A DNA stretch of 64,000 nt from Salpingoeca rosetta (Eukaryota > Protista > Choanoflagellata), in assembly GCA_033442325.1 (NCBI GenBank), contig JAWQFM010000012.1, positions 560,122-624,121 on the forward strand. The letters run 5' to 3'. The position numbers and the translations under genes are program-made. The stretch's first letter is position 1; each line of letters starts with the position of its first letter. Under the pieces are notes generated by a model. That model was not told the origin of the DNA. It did no database searches and worked only from the letters and a program-made list of their open reading frames with translations. Shown here piece by piece: positions 1 through 7,779 of this stretch.

Positions 1-104
1 GAGGCGCAGGGGGTAGACGGGTGGAAGAGTGGAAGAGGGGAAGAGGGGAGGAAAATGAAGGGAAATGAAGGACAAAGGACACGTATGCACACACACGCAC
101 GCAG

Positions 105-198
<94 letters not shown>

Positions 199-201
199 CA
201 C

Positions 202-403
202 CTGGCCTGCTGTCGTGTGGGGAGTCCAAAGGAGAGCTCTGTGGGGAGTGGGCTGGCGAGTCAATGTTGAGCATGGAGCTCTCCGTCTCAAGCTGTCGAA
301 CACTCAGCATGTCCACAAACTGCACGTACCAAGGGAGATGACACACCATGTCTATGTGTGAGCACGCACGTGTGTTTGCTTGCTTTGCTTCCGAAACGTG
401 TAG

Positions 404-438
<35 letters not shown>

Positions 439-1060
439 CGTGGAGTTGTGTTTGTGCGTGCGTGCATGAAATACAGCACAGCAGCACTTGAATGCCACGC
501 TGCCTTGTACCTCTTGATCGAGCTGAGCGAGCGAGTCTGCAGGAATGCGCGACTTCACAAACGTCAAATACTCAACAGCAGTCCGGAACACCGTTGCTTT
601 GTCCGCCTCCTGCATACACAACACAGCACGGCACAACACAACGCAGAGCGCAGCGTGTTGAGGGGTAGTGGTGAGAGTGTGGCGCGCTGGCAACCATCAG
701 CAAGCTCGCTGACATGTGTATCACTGGCAGAGAATCGACAATGTGCCGGTCCCCACCTTGACTGTCGGTACGAGAAGACGAAAGTTGTTGCAGCTTGCCA
801 CAATGTTCGCCCTGTCACCCAAACCAAGCACCAAAGCCAGCCAGTGAGTGCTGCGAACTTGCTTGCTGAGCCGCAATGCAACACAACACGGCACGCACGC
901 ACGCATACACGTGCACTCGAGACCAGCGACCACAACACGTTTCACACGACACACGAAACACGCCACCGCCACCACCACCACCGACCTTCTGAGCTTTTCC
1001 TTCTCTGTGTGACCAAGCGCTGGTTTTGCTTTCTTCCGTCCCCTCCCTGACACACAAACG

Positions 1061-1111
<51 letters not shown>

Positions 1112-1227
1112 TGTAAGTCTGTATGCGCTGAAGCAGAACATGTTGAAGAAGGCAATGGAGCCACTGCACAATGCACGCACCCACACGCACACGCAATGCA
1201 CGCACACCTCACACGCACACACGCAAT

Positions 1228-1263
<36 letters not shown>

Positions 1264-2797
1264 CATCGCCTGCTCACCTTTGAGTTGCGAAACGGATGCC
1301 TGTGGCTGAGGCAGCGTTGTCTGATGCATCGAACACGGCGAGCAAGAAAGAGGGTGTGCAGGATGTGAGGTCCGGCTGCAACAGCGGGAAAAATGCACAC
1401 CTCCTTGCACGCACACGCACACGCACACGCACACGCACACGCACCAATGCACGAACACGCACCCATGCAGGAACACGCACACGCACCCATGCAGGAACAA
1501 ATACACCCATATACGAAAAAAAAGTACAGGCACACAAACACACGAAGGCACGCGTTGCAAATCACCACACTGCTTGCTCTCCTCCATGCGTCGTACCAAC
1601 GACGATACGCACCTTCTGCGTGAAGATGTTCGTGTTGACCTGGCCGGTCGGCAGGGGCCAAACAAACGATTGTTGTCCCCCTTGCTGCTGCTGCTGCTGG
1701 TGGTGTTGGTGTTGGGGCTGTGGTTGCTGCTGATGCTGTTGCTGGTGCTGCTGTTGTTGTTGCTGCAGCTGTTGCAAGAACTGGTACTGTGTTGGGGACG
1801 CAGGCTGGAACTGTGAAGGGCTTGCTGGCTGACGTGCCTGCTGCATCACACTCTGCTGCTGCTGCTGTGGCTGCTGCTGTGGCTGCTGCTGTGGCTGCTG
1901 CTGTTTTTGTTGCTGTTGTGGAAGGGAGAACTGCCCGGATCCTGTGGGCGAGAAAGTCGGAGAAAAGCTCTGCTGCCTTTGCAGTCGTTGTTGTTGTGTC
2001 TGCTGTTGTTGTTGTGTCTGCTGTTGTGGCTGCTGTTGGGTGAAGCCTGGAGGGGAGAACGCCTGCCCACGCGAGAGCGGGGTGGACTGCTGGTGCATCG
2101 ACAGGGACGCATCGGGCACACTGCCGCTCCGGGCACGCTGTAAGGAGGTGTGGGATGAGGTAGCGTGAAGCTGCGCTAACAACAATGACGCAGGGACAAG
2201 CAGCTGGGTTTAGATACGCTACAGACAGTCACACACACACACACACACACACACAATATGGCCACTGAAACGGCACACACACACACCCTCACAAACACAT
2301 ACACCCTCACCCACATACGCACACCTTCACACACACACACACACCCTCACACACAAACACATACACCCTCACACACACACCAACGTCAATGACAACGACT
2401 TCAACAGAAACGACCACGGCATGCGTGTGCGGACCTGTCCGCCGGAGGTGAGACAGTAGCGCACGAGGGACTCTGGTTCCGAGAAGAGGGAGCTCGAGTG
2501 GTTCAGAGAGCCGTGTGACGCCTGGCGCCGATGCATTGCCGACGACGACGACGATGACGGCAGCATCGCACTTGTAGGCGACACGGGCGACTCCGGGTTG
2601 GTGTTGGGGAGGCTGTTTGATGCAAGCGGGGAGCTGTGGCGCGGCGCAGCGCGTTCTGATGGCGAGAATGTGGTGAAGGGGCCAGTGGACGTGTTCACAT
2701 CAGTCATGGAGGACGACGAGTTGACGGAGGTGAAGCTCGTATCAGGCATGTTGCCCATCAGCGCCTGTGCATCAGCTGTAACACAGTCCATGTGATA

Positions 2798-2894
<97 letters not shown>

Positions 2895-3690
2895 CGCGTG
2901 CATGTGTGTGTGTGTTAGTGATGTATGGGACAAAGGCGGTGGAGGAGGGTGTGTGGAATATGGGGCTCTGAAAATATAACACGACACAACACAACGCAAC
3001 GCAACACAGAAGCACATGTACACACGCATACAACACACCGTTGAGGAACTGGGCAAATGGTGTCCACTTGTCAAACTGTTCCTTGAGCGCCTGTGTTGTG
3101 AAGGGCTTTTGCAGCATGTCATTCATGCCGTGCGCCTGGTAGTCGCTCGTCGTGCCTGAAGAACACACACACACATGGAAGAAGAAAGACAGGGTTTTGG
3201 TGCGATGTGAGAAAGGAGTGGGCTTTGACAGCAAAGTGAAGGGCTTTAACGTGCGTCATACTTCCCATGCTGCTGGAATTTCGGTCCCGTGCACCACAGC
3301 ACACGCTACACGGCCACACAGCACCCCGCAGCGTGTACCTGATGCTGTGAAAGCGATAATCGGGGTGTAAGCGTTGAGCTGGCTGTCTGATCGAATCTGC
3401 TGCGTGGCCTGCACTCCGGAGAGACCAGGGAGGTGGATGTCCATGTAGATGATGTCAAAGTGCTGCTGTCTGCACAGCTGCAGCGCCGACTCGCCGTCAA
3501 ACGCCTGCACACCACAGAGCGGTCCATCAAAAGGGGGAGGGGGGAGGTGATGGAAGGGCGCGTGCGGCATACGAAACGGCGCAAAGCGATGTGGGCGAGA
3601 GGGTGTGAGCTTTCGGGCACATTACAACGCTGATATCATCGGCTGTGGCGCGCCACAAGGTCATTGTTGCTTGCATATCATGCCTTGTCT

Positions 3691-3750
<60 letters not shown>

Positions 3751-4538
3751 GGGCGATTTCGGTGGTGAGTTCGCGGAGGAGGGTACAGATGACGCGCTGT
3801 GTGAGGCGATCGTCCTCGACCACAAGCACGCGCGCCGCTTTCTGCACTCGCGCACGACGAGATCGAGGGGTGGGGCAAGGGCATGCGAGTTGGAGTAAAG
3901 ATGCAGCAGTGAGAAGGAGATGGGATCGGCGACACGAAAAAACAAAGCTTACACATACACACATACACATACACACACGTACACACATACACATACACAC
4001 ACACACAGAGGGACGACCAGCTATCCTAACTGTACAAGCACACAAGACTACAGCACTCAACCACAGCCAACCAACGCAAACTAACAGCCCACACTTTCTG
4101 CGAATGTGCATGTGTGTATGTGTGTATGTGTGTGTGTGTGTGCATGACGTACGGGGACTTCAATGTCGAGGTCGAGGACATCCATGTTGAGATCGCCAAT
4201 GCCGGAGAAGTCGAGCGCATCAAAGTCAATCTGCGGCGGTGGCTGCTGCTCCTGCTGCTGCGCCATGACGACGCACAAGGACGCACAAGGACGCGCATTG
4301 ACGGGCATTGACGGGCGTGGCGTGTGGGCAGGGAACACGTGCTGACGTGAGTGCTGTGTCTCCTTCAGCCATTAACAACAAAGGCGGAGGGGTGATGGGG
4401 AAAGAAAAAGAGAAAGACAGCGCACATAGACATGTACAGCTCAGGGGGAGAGAGAGTGTGTGTATCCCGCCTCACGCAACCACACAACCACACAACCACA
4501 CACACGCAGCCACACAACCACACACATTCACACACATT

Positions 4539-4569
<31 letters not shown>

Positions 4570-5286
4570 AAAACCCCCCCACCCCCGCACCTGAACGCGC
4601 TGGTTGCCCCATGTGCGGATGCAGTCGAGCAGGGTAGTCTTTGTGAATGGCTTTGGCAGGATGGCACTGAAGCCTGCTTCTTTGCACGGCAGCGATACCG
4701 CCGCCTCTGATCCGGTCATGGCAATCAGCGCCGTGTCTGCGTTTGCACCCGTCGTTCTGCGCACGTGCGTGTGGTTGTTGTTTGTGAGGTGCCAATGCAA
4801 TGCGAATGGCACCAGCAGCTACAGAGAGAGAGAGAGAGAGGCAAATCGCAAGAATTCAACTGTAAAAGCAACAAGAGGTCGGCGTGTGTGCCCATGCATC
4901 CCCTCCTTGCTCCTTTCGCCGTTCTTAGAACCCCCCTCCCCGTCCTTTTTTTTTCTCTCTCTCTCCACCTTCACACCTGATGGCTTTGGCAAGAATGAAG
5001 CCGTCAGAGACGGGTGGGTTGCACGCTGTGTCAACATCGATGAGGATGAGCCCAAACTTGGCATTGCCACACGCAGCCAGCGCCTTTTCCGCATCCGGCA
5101 CCTGCAATGCACAGATTGGCAGCGTGGAATTAGGAGTCACAGCACAGCACACCCGCACACCTCGTCTGTGGCACACCAGCACAGCACGGCATGGACATTG
5201 TTCTGTGGAACAGCGGCCCCAGCCCACCCAGCATACACGTTCACAAAATCCTTCTGACCAACGAACGCACGGCCACGCTCACATTG

Positions 5287-5322
<36 letters not shown>

Positions 5323-5479
5323 ATGCACGCACACGAACGCACACACACGCACACGCACACACGCACACACACACACACACACGAACCTGGGTGTGAGGAA
5401 CGCCGCTCTCCCCGAGCCAGGCGTGGATCAACCGCTGCAGGTCTCCATTGCCATCAAACACAAGGCAGTTGCAGTCCAT
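202..5479 (-). CDS. Tandem response-regulator receiver (REC-REC) + Ser/Gln-rich region + C-terminal bHLH transcription factor; 3' end runs off the window
   Basis: GT-AG exons in compatible phases: 5387-5479 (MDCNCLVFDGNGDLQRLIHAWLGESGVPHTQ), 4977-5101 (..FGLILIDVD..), 4591-4756 (..LIAMTG..ILPKPF..), ~4153-4260, 3749-3841 (KAARVLVVEDD..), 3339-3504 (..FDIIYMDIHLPGLSGVQATQQIR..TPIIAFTAS), 3039-3155 (..GMNDMLQKPF..), 2465-2775, 1613-2170 (polyQ), ~1278-1305, 986-1046 (GHTEKEKLRR), 757-811 (ANIVASCNNFRLLVPTVK), 511-609 (EADKATVFRTAVEYLTFVK), 202-319. Confidence 0.85.
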
Positions 5480-5550
5480 CTGTGACCACGGATGTGCACG
5501 AGGTCGTATGGGCAGCGTGTACGGGGTGGGTGGTAAGATGACAACATGGC

Positions 5551-5584
<34 letters not shown>

Positions 5585-5642
5585 CAGCAGCAGCAACGCG
5601 CGTCAAACCGCACCTCAACCGCAAAGTGTCTCACACACATGT

Positions 5643-5646
<4 letters not shown>

Positions 5647-5729
<83 letters not shown>
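5647..5729. repeat. (GA)n microsatellite
   Basis: Perfect AG dinucleotide run. Confidence 0.95.
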
Positions 5730-5732
<3 letters not shown>

Positions 5733-7779
5733 GCGAGTGCGCAGCACATACACGTTCAAACACACACATACACATGCACACAAATGCGTACACAACGCAC
5801 ACACACACAGACACACAGATACATACGAATGCATACCCCTCCCCACCCGTGCACACGTGCCTTGTTCAACTTGAGGTGCAAGCTACGATGAGGGACAAAA
5901 GGTGCCGTGCGTCACGTGGCACGGTCCTCTTCGCACAACCACCAGCTCGCCACACAGAAAGATGGGCTTGCTTGCTTCTTCGTGCTTTGTGCTTGCTTGC
6001 TTGTGCTGCCCGTCTGTTCCACAGCCAGCCAGAGCAATGCACGCCAATAACCAACAACGAGCAGCTGCCAGCAGGCAAAGACTGCTGCCAAGCAAGGGCT
6101 CAAGGAAAGTCGAGAACAGTCCCCCTGATTCTTGCGCGCCTCCACACTTCTTGTGCGTGCGTGCGTGTGTGTGTGTCTCTCTCTCTCTCTCTGTTCGCAG
6201 CCTCTCTCAAAACCACACAACAGCAAGCAAACAACACAACATCCGCGAACAACAACAAAATCAACTCTCAACCACCCCCAATCAAGGTCAAAATCCTGCA
6301 ACGGAATGGACAAGCAAGCAAGAAGCAAGCAAGCAAGCAAAAAGAAGCCAAGGCGCTCTCTCGCTCTCTCTCGCGTCATGCACACAACCGCCGCCGCACA
6401 TACAAACACAAACAGCCCGCGTTGCTCTTCTGCTCTTGTCAGCTGTGTCTGCCTGGGGCAAATAACAATAAAAAAAATCTGGGGACGACGTCATGCGGAC
6501 ATGCTATCTACCGCTGGTAAAAACTGCAGAAAATATGACAAATTCCGGGAGATCAGCATATGTCTGCGAAGTGCAACTCTTCCCGCCCCACCCCACAAAG
6601 CAATGCACACGCACACACACACACGCACGAAAACAACACAACCCGCGGCACGAGCTCCCCAAAAAAGCCAAAGGCACGACCGCAAGCAAGTCAAGTTTCC
6701 TCTGCCAGCCCCTGCCAGCCAACCAACTCTGCTCGACCCTGCCCTGCCCGCAGCTACAACTCTCTTCAACCCCCCGTCCCCCTCAGCGCCACTCGTCCGG
6801 AACCCTCGCCCCTCCCCCCCCGCTTTCGCCTCCTTCTCCACACGCGTCCGCCTTTCAAGGCAGTAGCAACTGGGAGCGAAAACAGCGCCCAAAATCCCCA
6901 GCCAATCAGCCAAGTAGAAGTCAAAGTTGCAGCAAGTCCACATCATCCTACTCGACAGCTCCACTTGACAGCTGCAACCCCGTTGCCTAAACCCGCTCAA
7001 GGTACGTTTGTGCGACACCGCTGGACGGCGTGAGTAGCCCCCGGCAACTCTGCTGGCTCGGTACGCGTCTCTGGGTCTTGCTGATCAGTCAAACGAGCCA
7101 ATCAACTCCTACTTCCAACTGTCGTTTCTGCTACTCGAAGGACTTCTCCCTTTCTCCTTCTCGACTCGCCCCTGCCCATCACGATCACGAGCCCTTAGAA
7201 GCTCGGGAAGCCCGTTTTGCTCGCTCAGGGCTGATGTGCACTGCTTCTGAGCACCGCCTAGTCGTGTTCAGACCCGCGTTCCACTTTCACCATCCCCCTT
7301 CTACCCTCGTCTTCCTCTTTCTTCGAGTCTTTGGTGGCTGCTCGTACTCTGTGTCGTTGCCTCCCGCTCTGCTCCTTTGTTGCTCGAGTTTGCGCTGTCC
7401 TTGCAAGCCTGCATGGCACCTGTTCCTTTTCTACGCCTTGTTTGCTGCTCCATGGGCCTGCTGTGCCCGCTGTTGTGGGCATGTGGTGCTGCTTTGACGT
7501 GCTGTACGCTACTTGCTGAGCTTGCAAGGCTTCTTAGTGGCACAACTTTGCCCTGCCCTGTCTCCCTTTCTCCCTGTCTCTCTTTTGTCGCTAGTACCGA
7601 GGCCTGAGCTCGGCTGCTTTCAACTCGTTTGTCTTCTCCTCCCCCCCCCCCTCTCCTGCCATGTGCTCCTTCTCTCCTGCCCTCCTGGTCTTTGCGCAAC
7701 CTCGTCAGACTCACTCACGCTCGTGTCTCCCTCCTGCTCTGCACCTGCAACCTCGTATCCGCTCCAGAAACCCACCATC

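What the first reader, a model, noticed from the sequence alone, without database searches (positions are those of the whole stretch)
202..5479. Response-regulator/bHLH fusion: a phosphorelay-style transcription factor in a probable close relative of animals
Seen: 14 phase-compatible exons splice two CheY-like receiver domains, a Ser/Gln-rich region and a bHLH into one frame. The ORF track hides this because the exons are short. Known: animals lack His-Asp phosphorelays; eukaryotic response-regulator TFs use HSF-type (fungal Skn7) or Myb/GARP (plant type-B ARR) DNA-binding domains. Inference: this is an independent third design, coupling Asp-phosphorylation to an E-box-binding bHLH. It would imply a His kinase/HPt pathway controlling transcription in this organism. 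I do not know of a characterised REC-bHLH protein.
Basis: partly seen in the sequence, partly recalled or inferred. Interest (0 to 1): 0.88.

Follow-up and report, generated by a model that had tools for sequence, protein, structure and literature searches.

The report
Receiver-receiver-bHLH transcription factor gene, expressed
A choanoflagellate-type genome encodes and transcribes one protein joining two bacterial-style phospho-receiver domains to an animal-style bHLH DNA-binding domain; the same design occurs in many unicellular relatives of animals but has apparently never been studied functionally.

Summary
The fusion is real. One junction needs correcting: it is 2435/2137, not 2465/2170. 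Two more coding exons lie beyond the window start, giving a 764-aa protein. It reads degenerate REC1, acidic linker, canonical REC2 (Pfam 42.5 bits on one exon), Ser/Gln-rich linker, bHLH (Pfam 25.7 bits, cut-off 20.7), conserved tail.

It is not unique. Collinear REC-REC-bHLH orthologues exist in at least 12 named choanoflagellates (including Monosiga brevicollis XP_001748279.1), in Corallochytrium and in Chromosphaera.

- REC2 keeps the full Asp-phosphorylation residue set in all 21 sequences.
- REC1 has lost one Mg-binding acidic residue in every choanoflagellate.
- The bHLH keeps the His-Glu-Arg signature of CACGTG binders.

Six-frame scans of the genome find one hybrid histidine kinase locus, one HPt candidate and this single separate receiver locus. 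That suggests a minimal phosphorelay ending on an E-box factor.

I found no paper describing the design. Hehenberger 2017, on two-component signalling in holozoans, could not be read and may mention it. Verdict: a genuine, conserved, uncharacterised variant of eukaryotic response-regulator transcription factors, of moderate interest.

The parts
5387..5479 (-). Coding exon 1: start codon (ATG at 5479) and REC1 strand 1/helix 1. The acidic pair reads D9-G10, so the second acidic residue is lost.
   Evidence: Contigs X4#7 and X13#3 continue from exon 2 into it. Choanoeca orthologues start at the same point. Key residues.
4977..5101 (-). Coding exon 2: REC1 core with Asp53 at the acceptor position, and a choanoflagellate-specific loop insertion after it.
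   Evidence: Contig pieces 5439-5566 of L002 are joined to exon 3. Alignment.
4591..4756 (-). Coding exon 3: C-terminal part of REC1 (Thr87, Lys108-Pro).
   Evidence: Pfam Response_reg 12.8 bits at profile positions 69-110. Contig X5#9 links it to exons 4-9.
4153..4257 (-). Coding exon 4: acidic, hydrophobic-punctuated linker between the two receivers. It is conserved in choanoflagellates.
   Evidence: The record length of contig X5#9 accounts for exons 4+5, 198 nt. Alignment.
3749..3841 (-). Coding exon 5: REC2 strand 1 with the acidic pair Glu172-Asp173.
   Evidence: Contig X5#9.
3339..3504 (-). Coding exon 6: REC2 core with the phospho-acceptor Asp216 and Thr247.
   Evidence: Pfam Response_reg 42.5 bits, cut-off 30.2. 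It is the best Response_reg six-frame hit in the genome. Joint 3616->3800 of L002.
3039..3155 (-). Coding exon 7: REC2 C-terminal part (Lys266-Pro-Phe) and a conserved DKWTPF motif.
   Evidence: Pfam 11.9 bits at profile positions 89-109. Joints 3237->3501 and 3616->3800 of L002.
2435..2775 (-). Coding exon 8: Ser/Thr/Pro-rich linker.
   Evidence: Joint 2599->2897 of L002 is seen in three contig sets and 11 raw reads.
1613..2137 (-). Coding exon 9: Gln-rich low-complexity region, a probable activation region.
   Evidence: Joints 2599->2897 and 1782->2075 of L002. Contig X13#1 spans the whole exon with a 12-nt gap in the CAG repeats.
1278..1320 (-). Coding exon 10: short linker exon.
   Evidence: Joint 1782->2075. 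The 258 nt of contig X13#1 between exons 14 and 9 equal exons 13+12+11+10.
986..1046 (-). Coding exon 11: bHLH basic region, with His604, Glu608 and Arg612 spanning the junction to exon 12.
   Evidence: Joint 1272->1447 of L002. Pfam HLH on the spliced stretch. Invariant H/E/R.
757..811 (-). Coding exon 12: bHLH helix 1 and a short loop.
   Evidence: Joints 1070->1218 and 1272->1447 of L002..
511..609 (-). Coding exon 13: bHLH helix 2 (DKATVFRTAVEYL) and the start of an extra conserved helix.
   Evidence: Joints 781->973 and 1070->1218 of L002.. The orthologue model has helices 405-424, 433-449 and 453-479.
202..319 (-). Coding exon 14: conserved C-terminal tail. It splices on to two further coding exons outside the window (G000:C12:559907-560070 and 559664-559687, stop TAG).
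   Evidence: Contig X13#1 joins 667-781 to 248-414 of L002, and joint 28->248 is listed. The tail aligns with the Monosiga and Choanoeca orthologues over about 160 residues at 51-52% identity.

Best explanation
This is the single separate response-regulator gene found in a choanoflagellate-type genome. The species is probably Salpingoeca rosetta; that is my inference from genome size and nearest relatives.

**What it is.** It is an orthologue of a holozoan-wide REC-REC-bHLH family. The 16 coding exons give a 764-aa protein with this layout:
- REC1, degenerate
- an acidic linker
- REC2, with a complete phospho-acceptor pocket
- a long Ser- and Gln-rich disordered region, the likely activation region
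- a short-loop group-B bHLH followed by an extra helix
- a conserved Ser/Pro-rich tail

**Proposed mechanism.** The only hybrid histidine kinase locus found autophosphorylates at its H-box. It passes the phosphoryl group to its own receiver, then to the one HPt protein, then to Asp216 of REC2. Phosphorylated REC2, with REC1 as an adaptor as in PleD, changes the dimer state or releases the bHLH. The zipper-less bHLH then dimerises on CACGTG-type E-boxes and the Gln-rich region activates transcription.

**Shown:**
- gene structure, single transcript and expression
- domain identities
- residue conservation
- kinase and HPt loci in the genome

**Inferred:**
- phosphotransfer
- which receiver is used
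- DNA motif
- direction of regulation
For: **Transcript**
- The chain of splice junctions and overlapping RNA contigs links REC1 to the stop codon.
- Stranded reads point to a minus-strand RNA.

**Domains**
- Response_reg scores 42.5 bits on exon 6.
- HLH scores 25.7 bits against a cut-off of 20.7.
- REC1 hits bacterial receivers at single-domain E 9e-09 and REC2 at 8e-11.

**Family**
- Eight of the ten best candidates from the library search carry Response_reg plus HLH in Pfam, seven of them with two receiver stretches.
- Further members were found, and the named ones come from 12 choanoflagellates plus Corallochytrium and Chromosphaera.
- My model aligns collinearly with them over residues 1-290 and 595-760.

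**Residues**
- REC2 has E/D-D, Asp, Thr/Ser and Lys in 21 of 21 sequences.
- bHLH His/Glu/Arg is present in 21 of 21.
- The second acidic residue of REC1 is kept only in the three non-choanoflagellate sequences.

**Fold**
- The AlphaFold model of the Choanoeca perplexa orthologue gives two (beta-alpha)5 domains at pLDDT about 90 and three C-terminal helices.
- Foldseek matches the tandem to PleD. It matches single receivers to Sln1 and other hybrid-kinase receivers solved with Ypd1.
- The closest solved bHLH sequences are Cbf1, Max, ARNT and MITF, which as I recall all bind CACGTG-class sites.
- The homodimer prediction for the orthologue's bHLH scores ipSAE 0.76, with best control 0.00. That mark was reached by 21 of 30 solved homodimers and 0 of 23 single chains. 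The runs share at least 97% of contacts and partner pLDDT is at least 79. This may be memory of solved bHLH dimers.

**Pathway**
- Six-frame scans found only two Response_reg loci genome-wide: this one and the kinase's own receiver.
- They found one clear HisKA locus, beside HATPase_c and REC on the same strand, plus one weak stray hit (0.85, 15.7 bits) on C35.
- The kinase H-box reads SHEIRTPL and its receiver has LVLMD.
- One HPt hit scores 24.1 bits and carries an AHSLKSG motif.
- One HK is also reported for Monosiga brevicollis (PMC6324907).
Against: - No biochemical evidence exists for phosphorylation, dimerisation or DNA binding.
- The aromatic switch residue of REC2 is Met/Ile/Leu in choanoflagellates and Tyr/Phe only in deeper holozoans.
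- The HPt hit is just under Pfam's cut-off (24.1 vs 24.6). Its gene model and that of the kinase were not assembled, and no sensor domain was recognised in the kinase.
- Six-frame scans see only exon-sized pieces, so further small receiver or HPt genes could have been missed.
- RNA linkage across the CAG-rich exon 9 rests on assembled contigs, not single molecules.
- The fold and dimer predictions were made on an orthologue, not on this protein. The spliced sequence has no reference to hand in.
- The bHLH might work mainly as a heterodimer.
Confidence: 0.7

Rival explanations
1. Phosphorylation-independent factor. Both receivers act as pseudo-receivers, serving as dimerisation or partner-binding modules as in plant PRRs, the PleD adaptor domain or the PDE8 N-terminal domain. 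The protein would then be simply a bHLH factor with REC-fold accessory domains.
For: - REC1 has lost the second Mg-binding acidic residue in every choanoflagellate. Its acceptor is Asn in Choanoeca flexa and Glu in one environmental sequence.
- The aromatic switch residue of REC2 is not conserved in choanoflagellates.
- Pfam iREC and PDE8A_N give weak hits on relatives.
Against: - REC2 keeps all five catalytic positions in 21 of 21 sequences across choanoflagellates, Corallochytrium and Chromosphaera. That is hard to explain without phosphochemistry.
- The genome keeps a kinase locus with an intact H-box and receiver Asp, and an HPt candidate with its His. The scans found no other separate receiver for them to feed.
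Confidence: 0.15
2. Obligate heterodimer partner. The phosphorelay input is delivered into another bHLH network, such as the organism's Myc/Max-type factors, rather than acting through a homodimer.
For: - The genome holds at least ten other HLH hits.
- The closest solved relatives include Max and ARNT, which as I recall are classic shared partners.
- The bHLH lacks a zipper.
Against: - The homodimer prediction on the orthologue passes with a wide margin over controls.
- A family-specific extra helix after helix 2 contributes to the predicted self-interface at residues 459-467.
- This rival overlaps the main reading rather than excluding it.
Confidence: 0.1
3. Gene-model artefact. The REC exons and the bHLH exons belong to two neighbouring genes or to separate transcripts, and are joined only by prediction or by chimeric contigs.
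For: - Linkage across the CAG-rich exon 9 depends on short-read assemblies. Two of the three contig sets break inside the repeat.
- No annotated protein of this genome turned up in the protein searches.
Against: - Contig X13#1 carries the exon 8/9 junction and runs through the whole of exon 9 to the 3' end.
- Contigs X4#5 and X5#9 carry REC2 plus 216 nt of exon 9.
- The frame is open throughout.
- Transcriptome-derived complete ORFs from at least ten other species have the same REC-REC-bHLH order.
Confidence: 0.03

Closest known systems
Monosiga brevicollis XP_001748279.1 / UniProt A9V6B9 (MONBRDRAFT_27791) and the choanoflagellate, Corallochytrium and Chromosphaera orthologues
   Same: Orthologous family with the same order of REC, REC and bHLH. 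Identity to the Monosiga protein is 57% over REC2 and 52% over the bHLH plus tail. The REC2 and bHLH residues are invariant.
   Different: These are uncharacterised database entries named only 'hypothetical' or 'Response regulatory domain-containing'. The Monosiga model lacks most of REC1, probably because it is N-terminally truncated. This copy has a much longer Ser/Gln-rich linker, giving 764 aa against 450-640.
Fungal Skn7 (response-regulator transcription factor)
   Same: From established knowledge, it is a eukaryotic transcription factor whose activity is set by His-Asp phosphorelay through an HPt protein (Ypd1) onto a receiver Asp. The REC2 model superposes on Sln1-type receivers solved with Ypd1.
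   Different: As I recall, Skn7 has one receiver placed C-terminal to an HSF-type DNA-binding domain. Here there are two receivers placed N-terminal to a bHLH, and no HSF-type domain was hit.
Plant type-B ARRs
   Same: From established knowledge, they have an N-terminal receiver followed by a DNA-binding domain and a Gln/Pro-rich activation region, and they are fed by hybrid kinases through HPt proteins.
   Different: Their DNA-binding domain is Myb/GARP and they have a single receiver. The lineage and DNA motif differ.
Caulobacter PleD (REC-REC-GGDEF)
   Same: It is the best whole-model Foldseek match (E 1.6e-12). As I recall, it has tandem receivers in which one accepts the phosphoryl group and the other is an adaptor used for dimerisation.
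   Different: The order is reversed, since here the degenerate domain comes first. The output is a DNA-binding bHLH rather than a diguanylate cyclase. PleD is bacterial.
Group-B bHLH factors (yeast Cbf1, Max, USF, MITF, SREBP, ARNT)
   Same: They share the His-Glu-Arg basic-region signature and a short loop. They are the best PDB sequence matches: Cbf1 at E 1.6e-4 for the Monosiga domain and Max at 9e-7 for the Chromosphaera-like domain.
   Different: There is no leucine zipper continuous with helix 2; a Pro follows it and a separate helix comes after. There is no PAS domain. No known group-B factor carries receiver domains.

Membership tests
CheY-like receiver domain (Pfam PF00072 Response_reg) | Profile match above the curated cut-off | tested here: met
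   Exon 6 alone scores 42.5 bits against 30.2 and 41.6 bits in the genome scan. Orthologues score 83-157 bits, seven of the ten scanned with two stretches.
CheY-like receiver domain (Pfam PF00072 Response_reg) | Complete phospho-acceptor pocket in REC2: acidic pair, acceptor Asp, Thr/Ser, Lys | tested here: met
   E172, D173, D216, T247 and K266. The same five positions are conserved in 21 of 21 family members.
CheY-like receiver domain (Pfam PF00072 Response_reg) | Complete phospho-acceptor pocket in REC1 | tested here: not met
   REC1 reads D9, G10, D53, T87, K108. The second acidic residue is missing here and in all choanoflagellates, and is present only in Corallochytrium, Chromosphaera and one metagenomic relative. 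REC1 is still a receiver homologue.
CheY-like receiver domain (Pfam PF00072 Response_reg) | (beta-alpha)5 fold | tested here: met
   Tested on the Choanoeca perplexa orthologue, not on this protein. There are two five-strand/five-helix domains at pLDDT about 85-95. TM 0.8-0.88 by target to CheY, Sln1 and GacS receivers.
CheY-like receiver domain (Pfam PF00072 Response_reg) | Asp phosphorylation by HPt~P or small phospho-donors | not testable with these tools
   This needs biochemistry.
bHLH DNA-binding domain (Pfam PF00010), group B | Profile match above the curated cut-off | tested here: met
   25.7 bits against 20.7, E 1e-05, on the spliced 71-aa stretch. Orthologues score 21.7-57 bits.
bHLH DNA-binding domain (Pfam PF00010), group B | His5-Glu9-Arg13 basic-region signature of CACGTG binders | tested here: met
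   H604, E608 and R612, invariant in 21 of 21. Assigning the signature to CACGTG rests on established knowledge of bHLH groups.
bHLH DNA-binding domain (Pfam PF00010), group B | Two helices that pack as a dimer (prediction only) | tested here: met
   Orthologue helices are 405-424 and 433-449. The homodimer scores 0.76 against a best control of 0.00. The mark was reached by 21 of 30 solved homodimers and 0 of 23 single chains, and the result may be from memory of solved bHLH dimers.
bHLH DNA-binding domain (Pfam PF00010), group B | Sequence-specific binding to an E-box | not testable with these tools
   This needs EMSA, DAP-seq or ChIP.
Holozoan REC-REC-bHLH orthologue group | Collinear similarity over both conserved blocks, with the same domain order | tested here: met
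   BLASTP of the spliced model gives residues 1-290 at E 1e-45 to 2e-88 and residues 595-760 at up to 1e-40 against 20+ members. Alignments.
Fungal Skn7-type response-regulator transcription factor | HSF-type DNA-binding domain N-terminal to a single receiver | tested here: not met
   Pfam scans of the exons and orthologues found no HSF-type hit. The DNA-binding domain is an HLH C-terminal to two receivers.
Plant type-B ARR | Myb/GARP DNA-binding domain after the receiver | tested here: not met
   Pfam scans found no Myb-type hit, only an HLH.
bHLH-LZ / bHLH-PAS classes | Leucine zipper continuous with helix 2, or PAS domains after the bHLH | tested here: not met
   Helix 2 ends before a Pro and a separate helix follows. 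No orthologue has a PAS hit.

The most novel reading that the evidence does not exclude
The REC-REC-bHLH protein is the sole transcriptional output of a one-kinase, one-HPt phosphorelay. That relay was already present in the last common ancestor of Holozoa and was lost on the animal stem. Asp-phosphorylation-driven receiver dimerisation does the job that zippers or PAS domains do in animal bHLH factors. This would be a previously uncharacterised way of switching an E-box factor, directly testable in a genetically tractable choanoflagellate.
Probability: 0.35. Interest if true: 0.7.

Novelty: new variant of a known kind. Interest (0 to 1): 0.5.

Why it matters
As I recall, animals have no His-Asp phosphorelay, while bHLH factors are central to animal development. 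Here the two meet in one conserved protein in the closest relatives of animals. It appears to be the only separate receiver locus in the genome.

That gives a compact pathway to work on, with three genes: kinase, HPt and regulator. It could show what environmental signal a choanoflagellate wires to E-box transcription. It could also show how a bHLH can be switched by Asp phosphorylation, and what was lost when animals discarded two-component signalling.

It also flags that published gene models may under-represent this family. The Monosiga model looks truncated, and no model for this genome was retrieved.

Tried and rejected
**Splice models**
- My first model (donor 2435 with acceptor 2175) broke the frame.
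It is not among the supported joints, and RNA shows 2435/2137. A minor isoform cannot be excluded, because 21 weaker joints were not listed.

**Scans that could not see the domain**
- The six-frame HLH scan of the genome did not find this locus, because the domain is split over three exons of about 19, 18 and 33 residues.
- Exons 11 and 12 are too short to scan alone.

- The full 764-aa spliced protein has no reference. I did not hand it to any search, fold or complex tool. Only a 71-aa bHLH stretch was typed, and the rest was analysed in scripts.

**Searches with little or no yield**
- No protein identical to this gene's product appeared in the library searches. I could not see how, or whether, the gene is annotated.
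- The region-restricted search with the Chromosphaera-like bHLH found only itself and Chromosphaera.
- The Atlas look-up gave only generic bacterial receiver clusters.
- I could not test for presence or absence in Capsaspora, other ichthyosporeans, fungi or animals.

**Literature**
- Nine searches found no description of a receiver-bHLH protein.
- Hehenberger et al. 2017 (Curr Biol 27:2043) is not held, and citing papers quote only its title.

**E-box count**
- CACGTG is not enriched: 43 in the window against 82 expected from shuffles. I do not claim the two sites upstream of the ATG as autoregulation.

**Earlier notes**
- The two look-ups of earlier notes added nothing.

Full report
**1. What is in the sequence**

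On the minus strand of window 202-5479 there are 14 short open segments. Each is flanked by AG...GT, and most introns are full of (GT)n or (CA)n runs. My own first choice for one acceptor broke the frame.

The window is G000:C12:560122-624121, in an assembly of 55.4 Mb and 68 contigs. I fetched the flanking DNA and found that the frame continues past the window start.

**2. RNA evidence**

L002 equals window + 462. Three runs were Logan contig sets whose word share (0.32-0.43) fits exons only. The fourth was raw stranded RNA-seq.

All listed CT..AC joints (GT..AG on the minus strand) coincide with the model:
- 781->973
- 1070->1218
- 1272->1447
- 1782->2075
- 2599->2897
- 3237->3501
- 3616->3800
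- 28->248

Each is seen in all three contig sets and in 11-46 raw reads. First mates lie almost only on the + strand, as expected for a minus-strand RNA in a standard stranded library.

Junctions that were not listed follow from contig arithmetic:
- X13#1 places 258 nt between exon 14 and exon 9. That equals exons 13+12+11+10 (99+55+61+43).
- X5#9 places 198 nt between exon 3 and exon 6. That equals exons 4+5.
- X4#7 and X13#3 join exons 3, 2 and 1.

X13#1 carries the exon 8/9 junction and runs on to the 3' end. X4#5 and X5#9 carry REC2 and 216 nt of exon 9. So the receiver and bHLH exons are on one assembled transcript.

- The exon 8/9 junction is 2435 | 2137.
- Two more coding exons follow exon 14, at C12:559907-560070 and 559664-559687, ending in TAG.
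- Depth suggests exon 1 starts at the AG just before the ATG. At least about 315 nt of 5'UTR then lie on upstream exon(s) that I did not locate.

The final CDS has 16 coding exons and encodes 764 aa. The ATG at 5479 is supported by the Choanoeca orthologues, whose complete ORFs start at the same position.

**3. Domains**

- Pfam on single exons gives Response_reg at 42.5 bits for exon 6 (cut-off 30.2). Exons 3 and 7 give weak matches in the right profile positions.
- The bHLH is split over three tiny exons, so the six-frame genome scan misses it. The spliced 71-aa stretch scores 25.7 bits against a cut-off of 20.7.
- REC1 (residues 1-128) matches unrelated, mostly bacterial receivers at single-domain E 9e-09. 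It matches REC2 at 29% identity, E 8e-11.

**4. It is a family**

A full-library HMMER search with exon 6 returned eukaryotic proteins of 450-640 aa among the bacterial kinases, with the match at about residue 200-280. Pfam shows Response_reg plus HLH in eight of the ten I scanned, seven of them with two receiver stretches. Word-indexed searches added more members.

Source names are:
- Craspedid choanoflagellates and an uncultured one: Monosiga brevicollis (XP_001748279.1 / A9V6B9), Choanoeca perplexa, C. flexa, Mylnosiga fluctuans, Salpingoeca infusionum, S. urceolata and uncultured choanoflagellate UC4.
- Acanthoecid choanoflagellates: Acanthoeca spectabilis, Acanthoecidae sp. 10tr, Savillea parva, Stephanoeca diplocostata and Didymoeca costata.
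- Other holozoans: Corallochytrium limacisporum and the ichthyosporean Chromosphaera perkinsii.
- Environmental sequences.

My spliced model aligns collinearly with all of them over residues 1-290 and 595-760. The best matches are Choanoeca and Monosiga. Together with the genome size, this is why I think the organism is a craspedid choanoflagellate, probably Salpingoeca rosetta. That is inference, because names are coded in the tools.

**5. Residues**

| Element | This protein | Across the family |
|---|---|---|
| REC2 | E172, D173, D216, T247, K266 | Conserved in 21 of 21 |
| REC1 | D9, G10, D53, T87, K108 | Second acidic residue replaced in every choanoflagellate; present in Corallochytrium, Chromosphaera and a Chromosphaera-like metagenomic protein |
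| bHLH basic region | H604, E608, R612 | Invariant in 21 of 21 |

- Choanoflagellate REC1 also has an insertion after the acceptor strand. Two members have Asn or Glu at the acceptor position.
- REC1 therefore looks like a receiver drifting towards an adaptor role, while REC2 is under strict constraint.
- The bHLH loop is short. A Pro follows helix 2, and then comes a conserved extra helix.

**6. Structure predictions, made on an orthologue**

The spliced sequence has no reference to hand in, so I used the Choanoeca perplexa orthologue.

- The AlphaFold model built with alignment A2 gives two (beta-alpha)5 domains at pLDDT about 90. It has a disordered linker and helices 405-424, 433-449 and 453-479.
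- Foldseek matches the tandem to PleD. It matches single domains to Sln1-type and other hybrid-kinase receivers, several solved with Ypd1-type HPt proteins.
- PDB sequence searches put the bHLH nearest to Cbf1, Max, ARNT, MITF, SREBP and USF.
- A homodimer prediction of the bHLH plus extra helix scored 0.76, with best control 0.00. That mark was reached by 21 of 30 solved homodimers and 0 of 23 single chains. The runs share at least 97% of contacts and partner pLDDT is at least 79. It may reflect memory of solved bHLH dimers.

**7. The rest of the pathway**

- Genome-wide six-frame scans find only two Response_reg loci. One is this gene and the other is on C28.
- The C28 locus also holds HisKA and HATPase_c on the same strand within about 5 kb.
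- Its H-box reads SHEIRTPL, and its receiver has the LVLMD acceptor motif. It is therefore a hybrid kinase, with no recognisable sensor domain in the pieces I scanned.
- One HPt hit, at 24.1 bits and just under the cut-off, lies on C8 and has an AHSLKSG motif.
- A published survey counts one histidine kinase in Monosiga brevicollis and none in animals (PMC6324907).
- The simplest reading is a minimal kinase -> HPt -> regulator relay.
- Exon-by-exon scans give lower bounds, so small extra components may have been missed.

**8. Mechanism, and what is inferred**

Shown:
- gene structure and expression
- domain identity
- orthology
- residue conservation
- presence of kinase and HPt loci

Inferred:
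- Asp216 of REC2 is the acceptor.
- REC1 is an adaptor.
- Phosphorylation controls bHLH dimerisation or availability.
- The target is a CACGTG-type E-box.
- The Gln-rich region activates transcription.

The main rival is that the receivers are phosphorylation-independent modules. The perfect conservation of the REC2 pocket and the retention of kinase and HPt weaken it. Heterodimerisation with other bHLH factors is compatible with the main reading.

**9. Comparison and novelty**

Functionally this protein resembles Skn7 and type-B ARRs, which are eukaryotic transcription factors at the end of a phosphorelay. It fails their membership tests, because the DNA-binding domain is neither HSF-type nor Myb/GARP.

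It belongs to the receiver and bHLH superfamilies and to an uncharacterised holozoan orthologue group that already sits in public protein sets.

Nine literature searches found no description of a receiver-bHLH protein. The one paper likely to mention it, Hehenberger et al. 2017, is not held. Its title states that a two-component system was present in the ancestor of animals, so the evolutionary inference is at least partly published.

I therefore rate this a new variant of a known kind.

Noticed in passing
window 1-6000, and L001/L002 introns: Nearly every intron of this gene carries a long (GT)n/(CA)n or (CT)n microsatellite, for example at 20-195, 2800-2890, 3690-3750 and 5650-5735. The reads tool skipped them as repeats, so intron retention could not be judged there.
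   Followed up: no
window 1613-2137 (exon 9): RNA contig X13#1 spans the CAG/CAA-rich exon with a 12-nt gap relative to the genome. Many apparent variants and chimeric joints pile up at L002 2140-2235. They are probably a poly-Gln length difference or assembly collapse, plus cross-mapping from other CAG-rich genes.
   Followed up: partly
window 5854-5859 and 5913-5918: Two CACGTG E-boxes lie about 380-440 bp upstream of the ATG of a gene that encodes a probable CACGTG binder. The motif is under-represented in the window as a whole (43 against 82 expected), so this stays only a lead for autoregulation.
   Followed up: partly
P0013 (Monosiga brevicollis XP_001748279.1): The public Monosiga model begins inside REC1, at the position of residue ~99 of this protein. 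All transcriptome-derived orthologues have a full REC1, so the model is probably N-terminally truncated.
   Followed up: partly
L003 = G000:C28:615000-624999, minus strand: This is the hybrid histidine kinase locus, with HisKA at about 7227-7313, HATPase_c at about 5849-6757 and REC at about 2191-2835 of L003. The upstream ORF pieces are low-complexity and show no recognisable sensor domain. The receiver is interrupted by a (CA)n-rich intron right after the acceptor Asp.
   Followed up: partly
L004 = G000:C8:922500-927000, minus strand, about 2087-2266: This is the only HPt candidate found in the genome, with an AHSLKSG phospho-His motif. It scores 24.1 bits, just below Pfam's 24.6 cut-off. 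The gene model was not assembled.
   Followed up: partly
L001 about 5300-7150 (G000:C12:557400-559270), plus strand: The stretch just downstream of the 3' end appears to hold coding exons on the opposite strand. That would be a convergent neighbour ending within a few hundred bases of this gene's 3'UTR.
   Followed up: no
protein searches: No protein identical to this gene's product was returned by any library search, although orthologues from about 15 other species were. The gene may be missing, split or mis-modelled in the deposited annotation of this genome.
   Followed up: no
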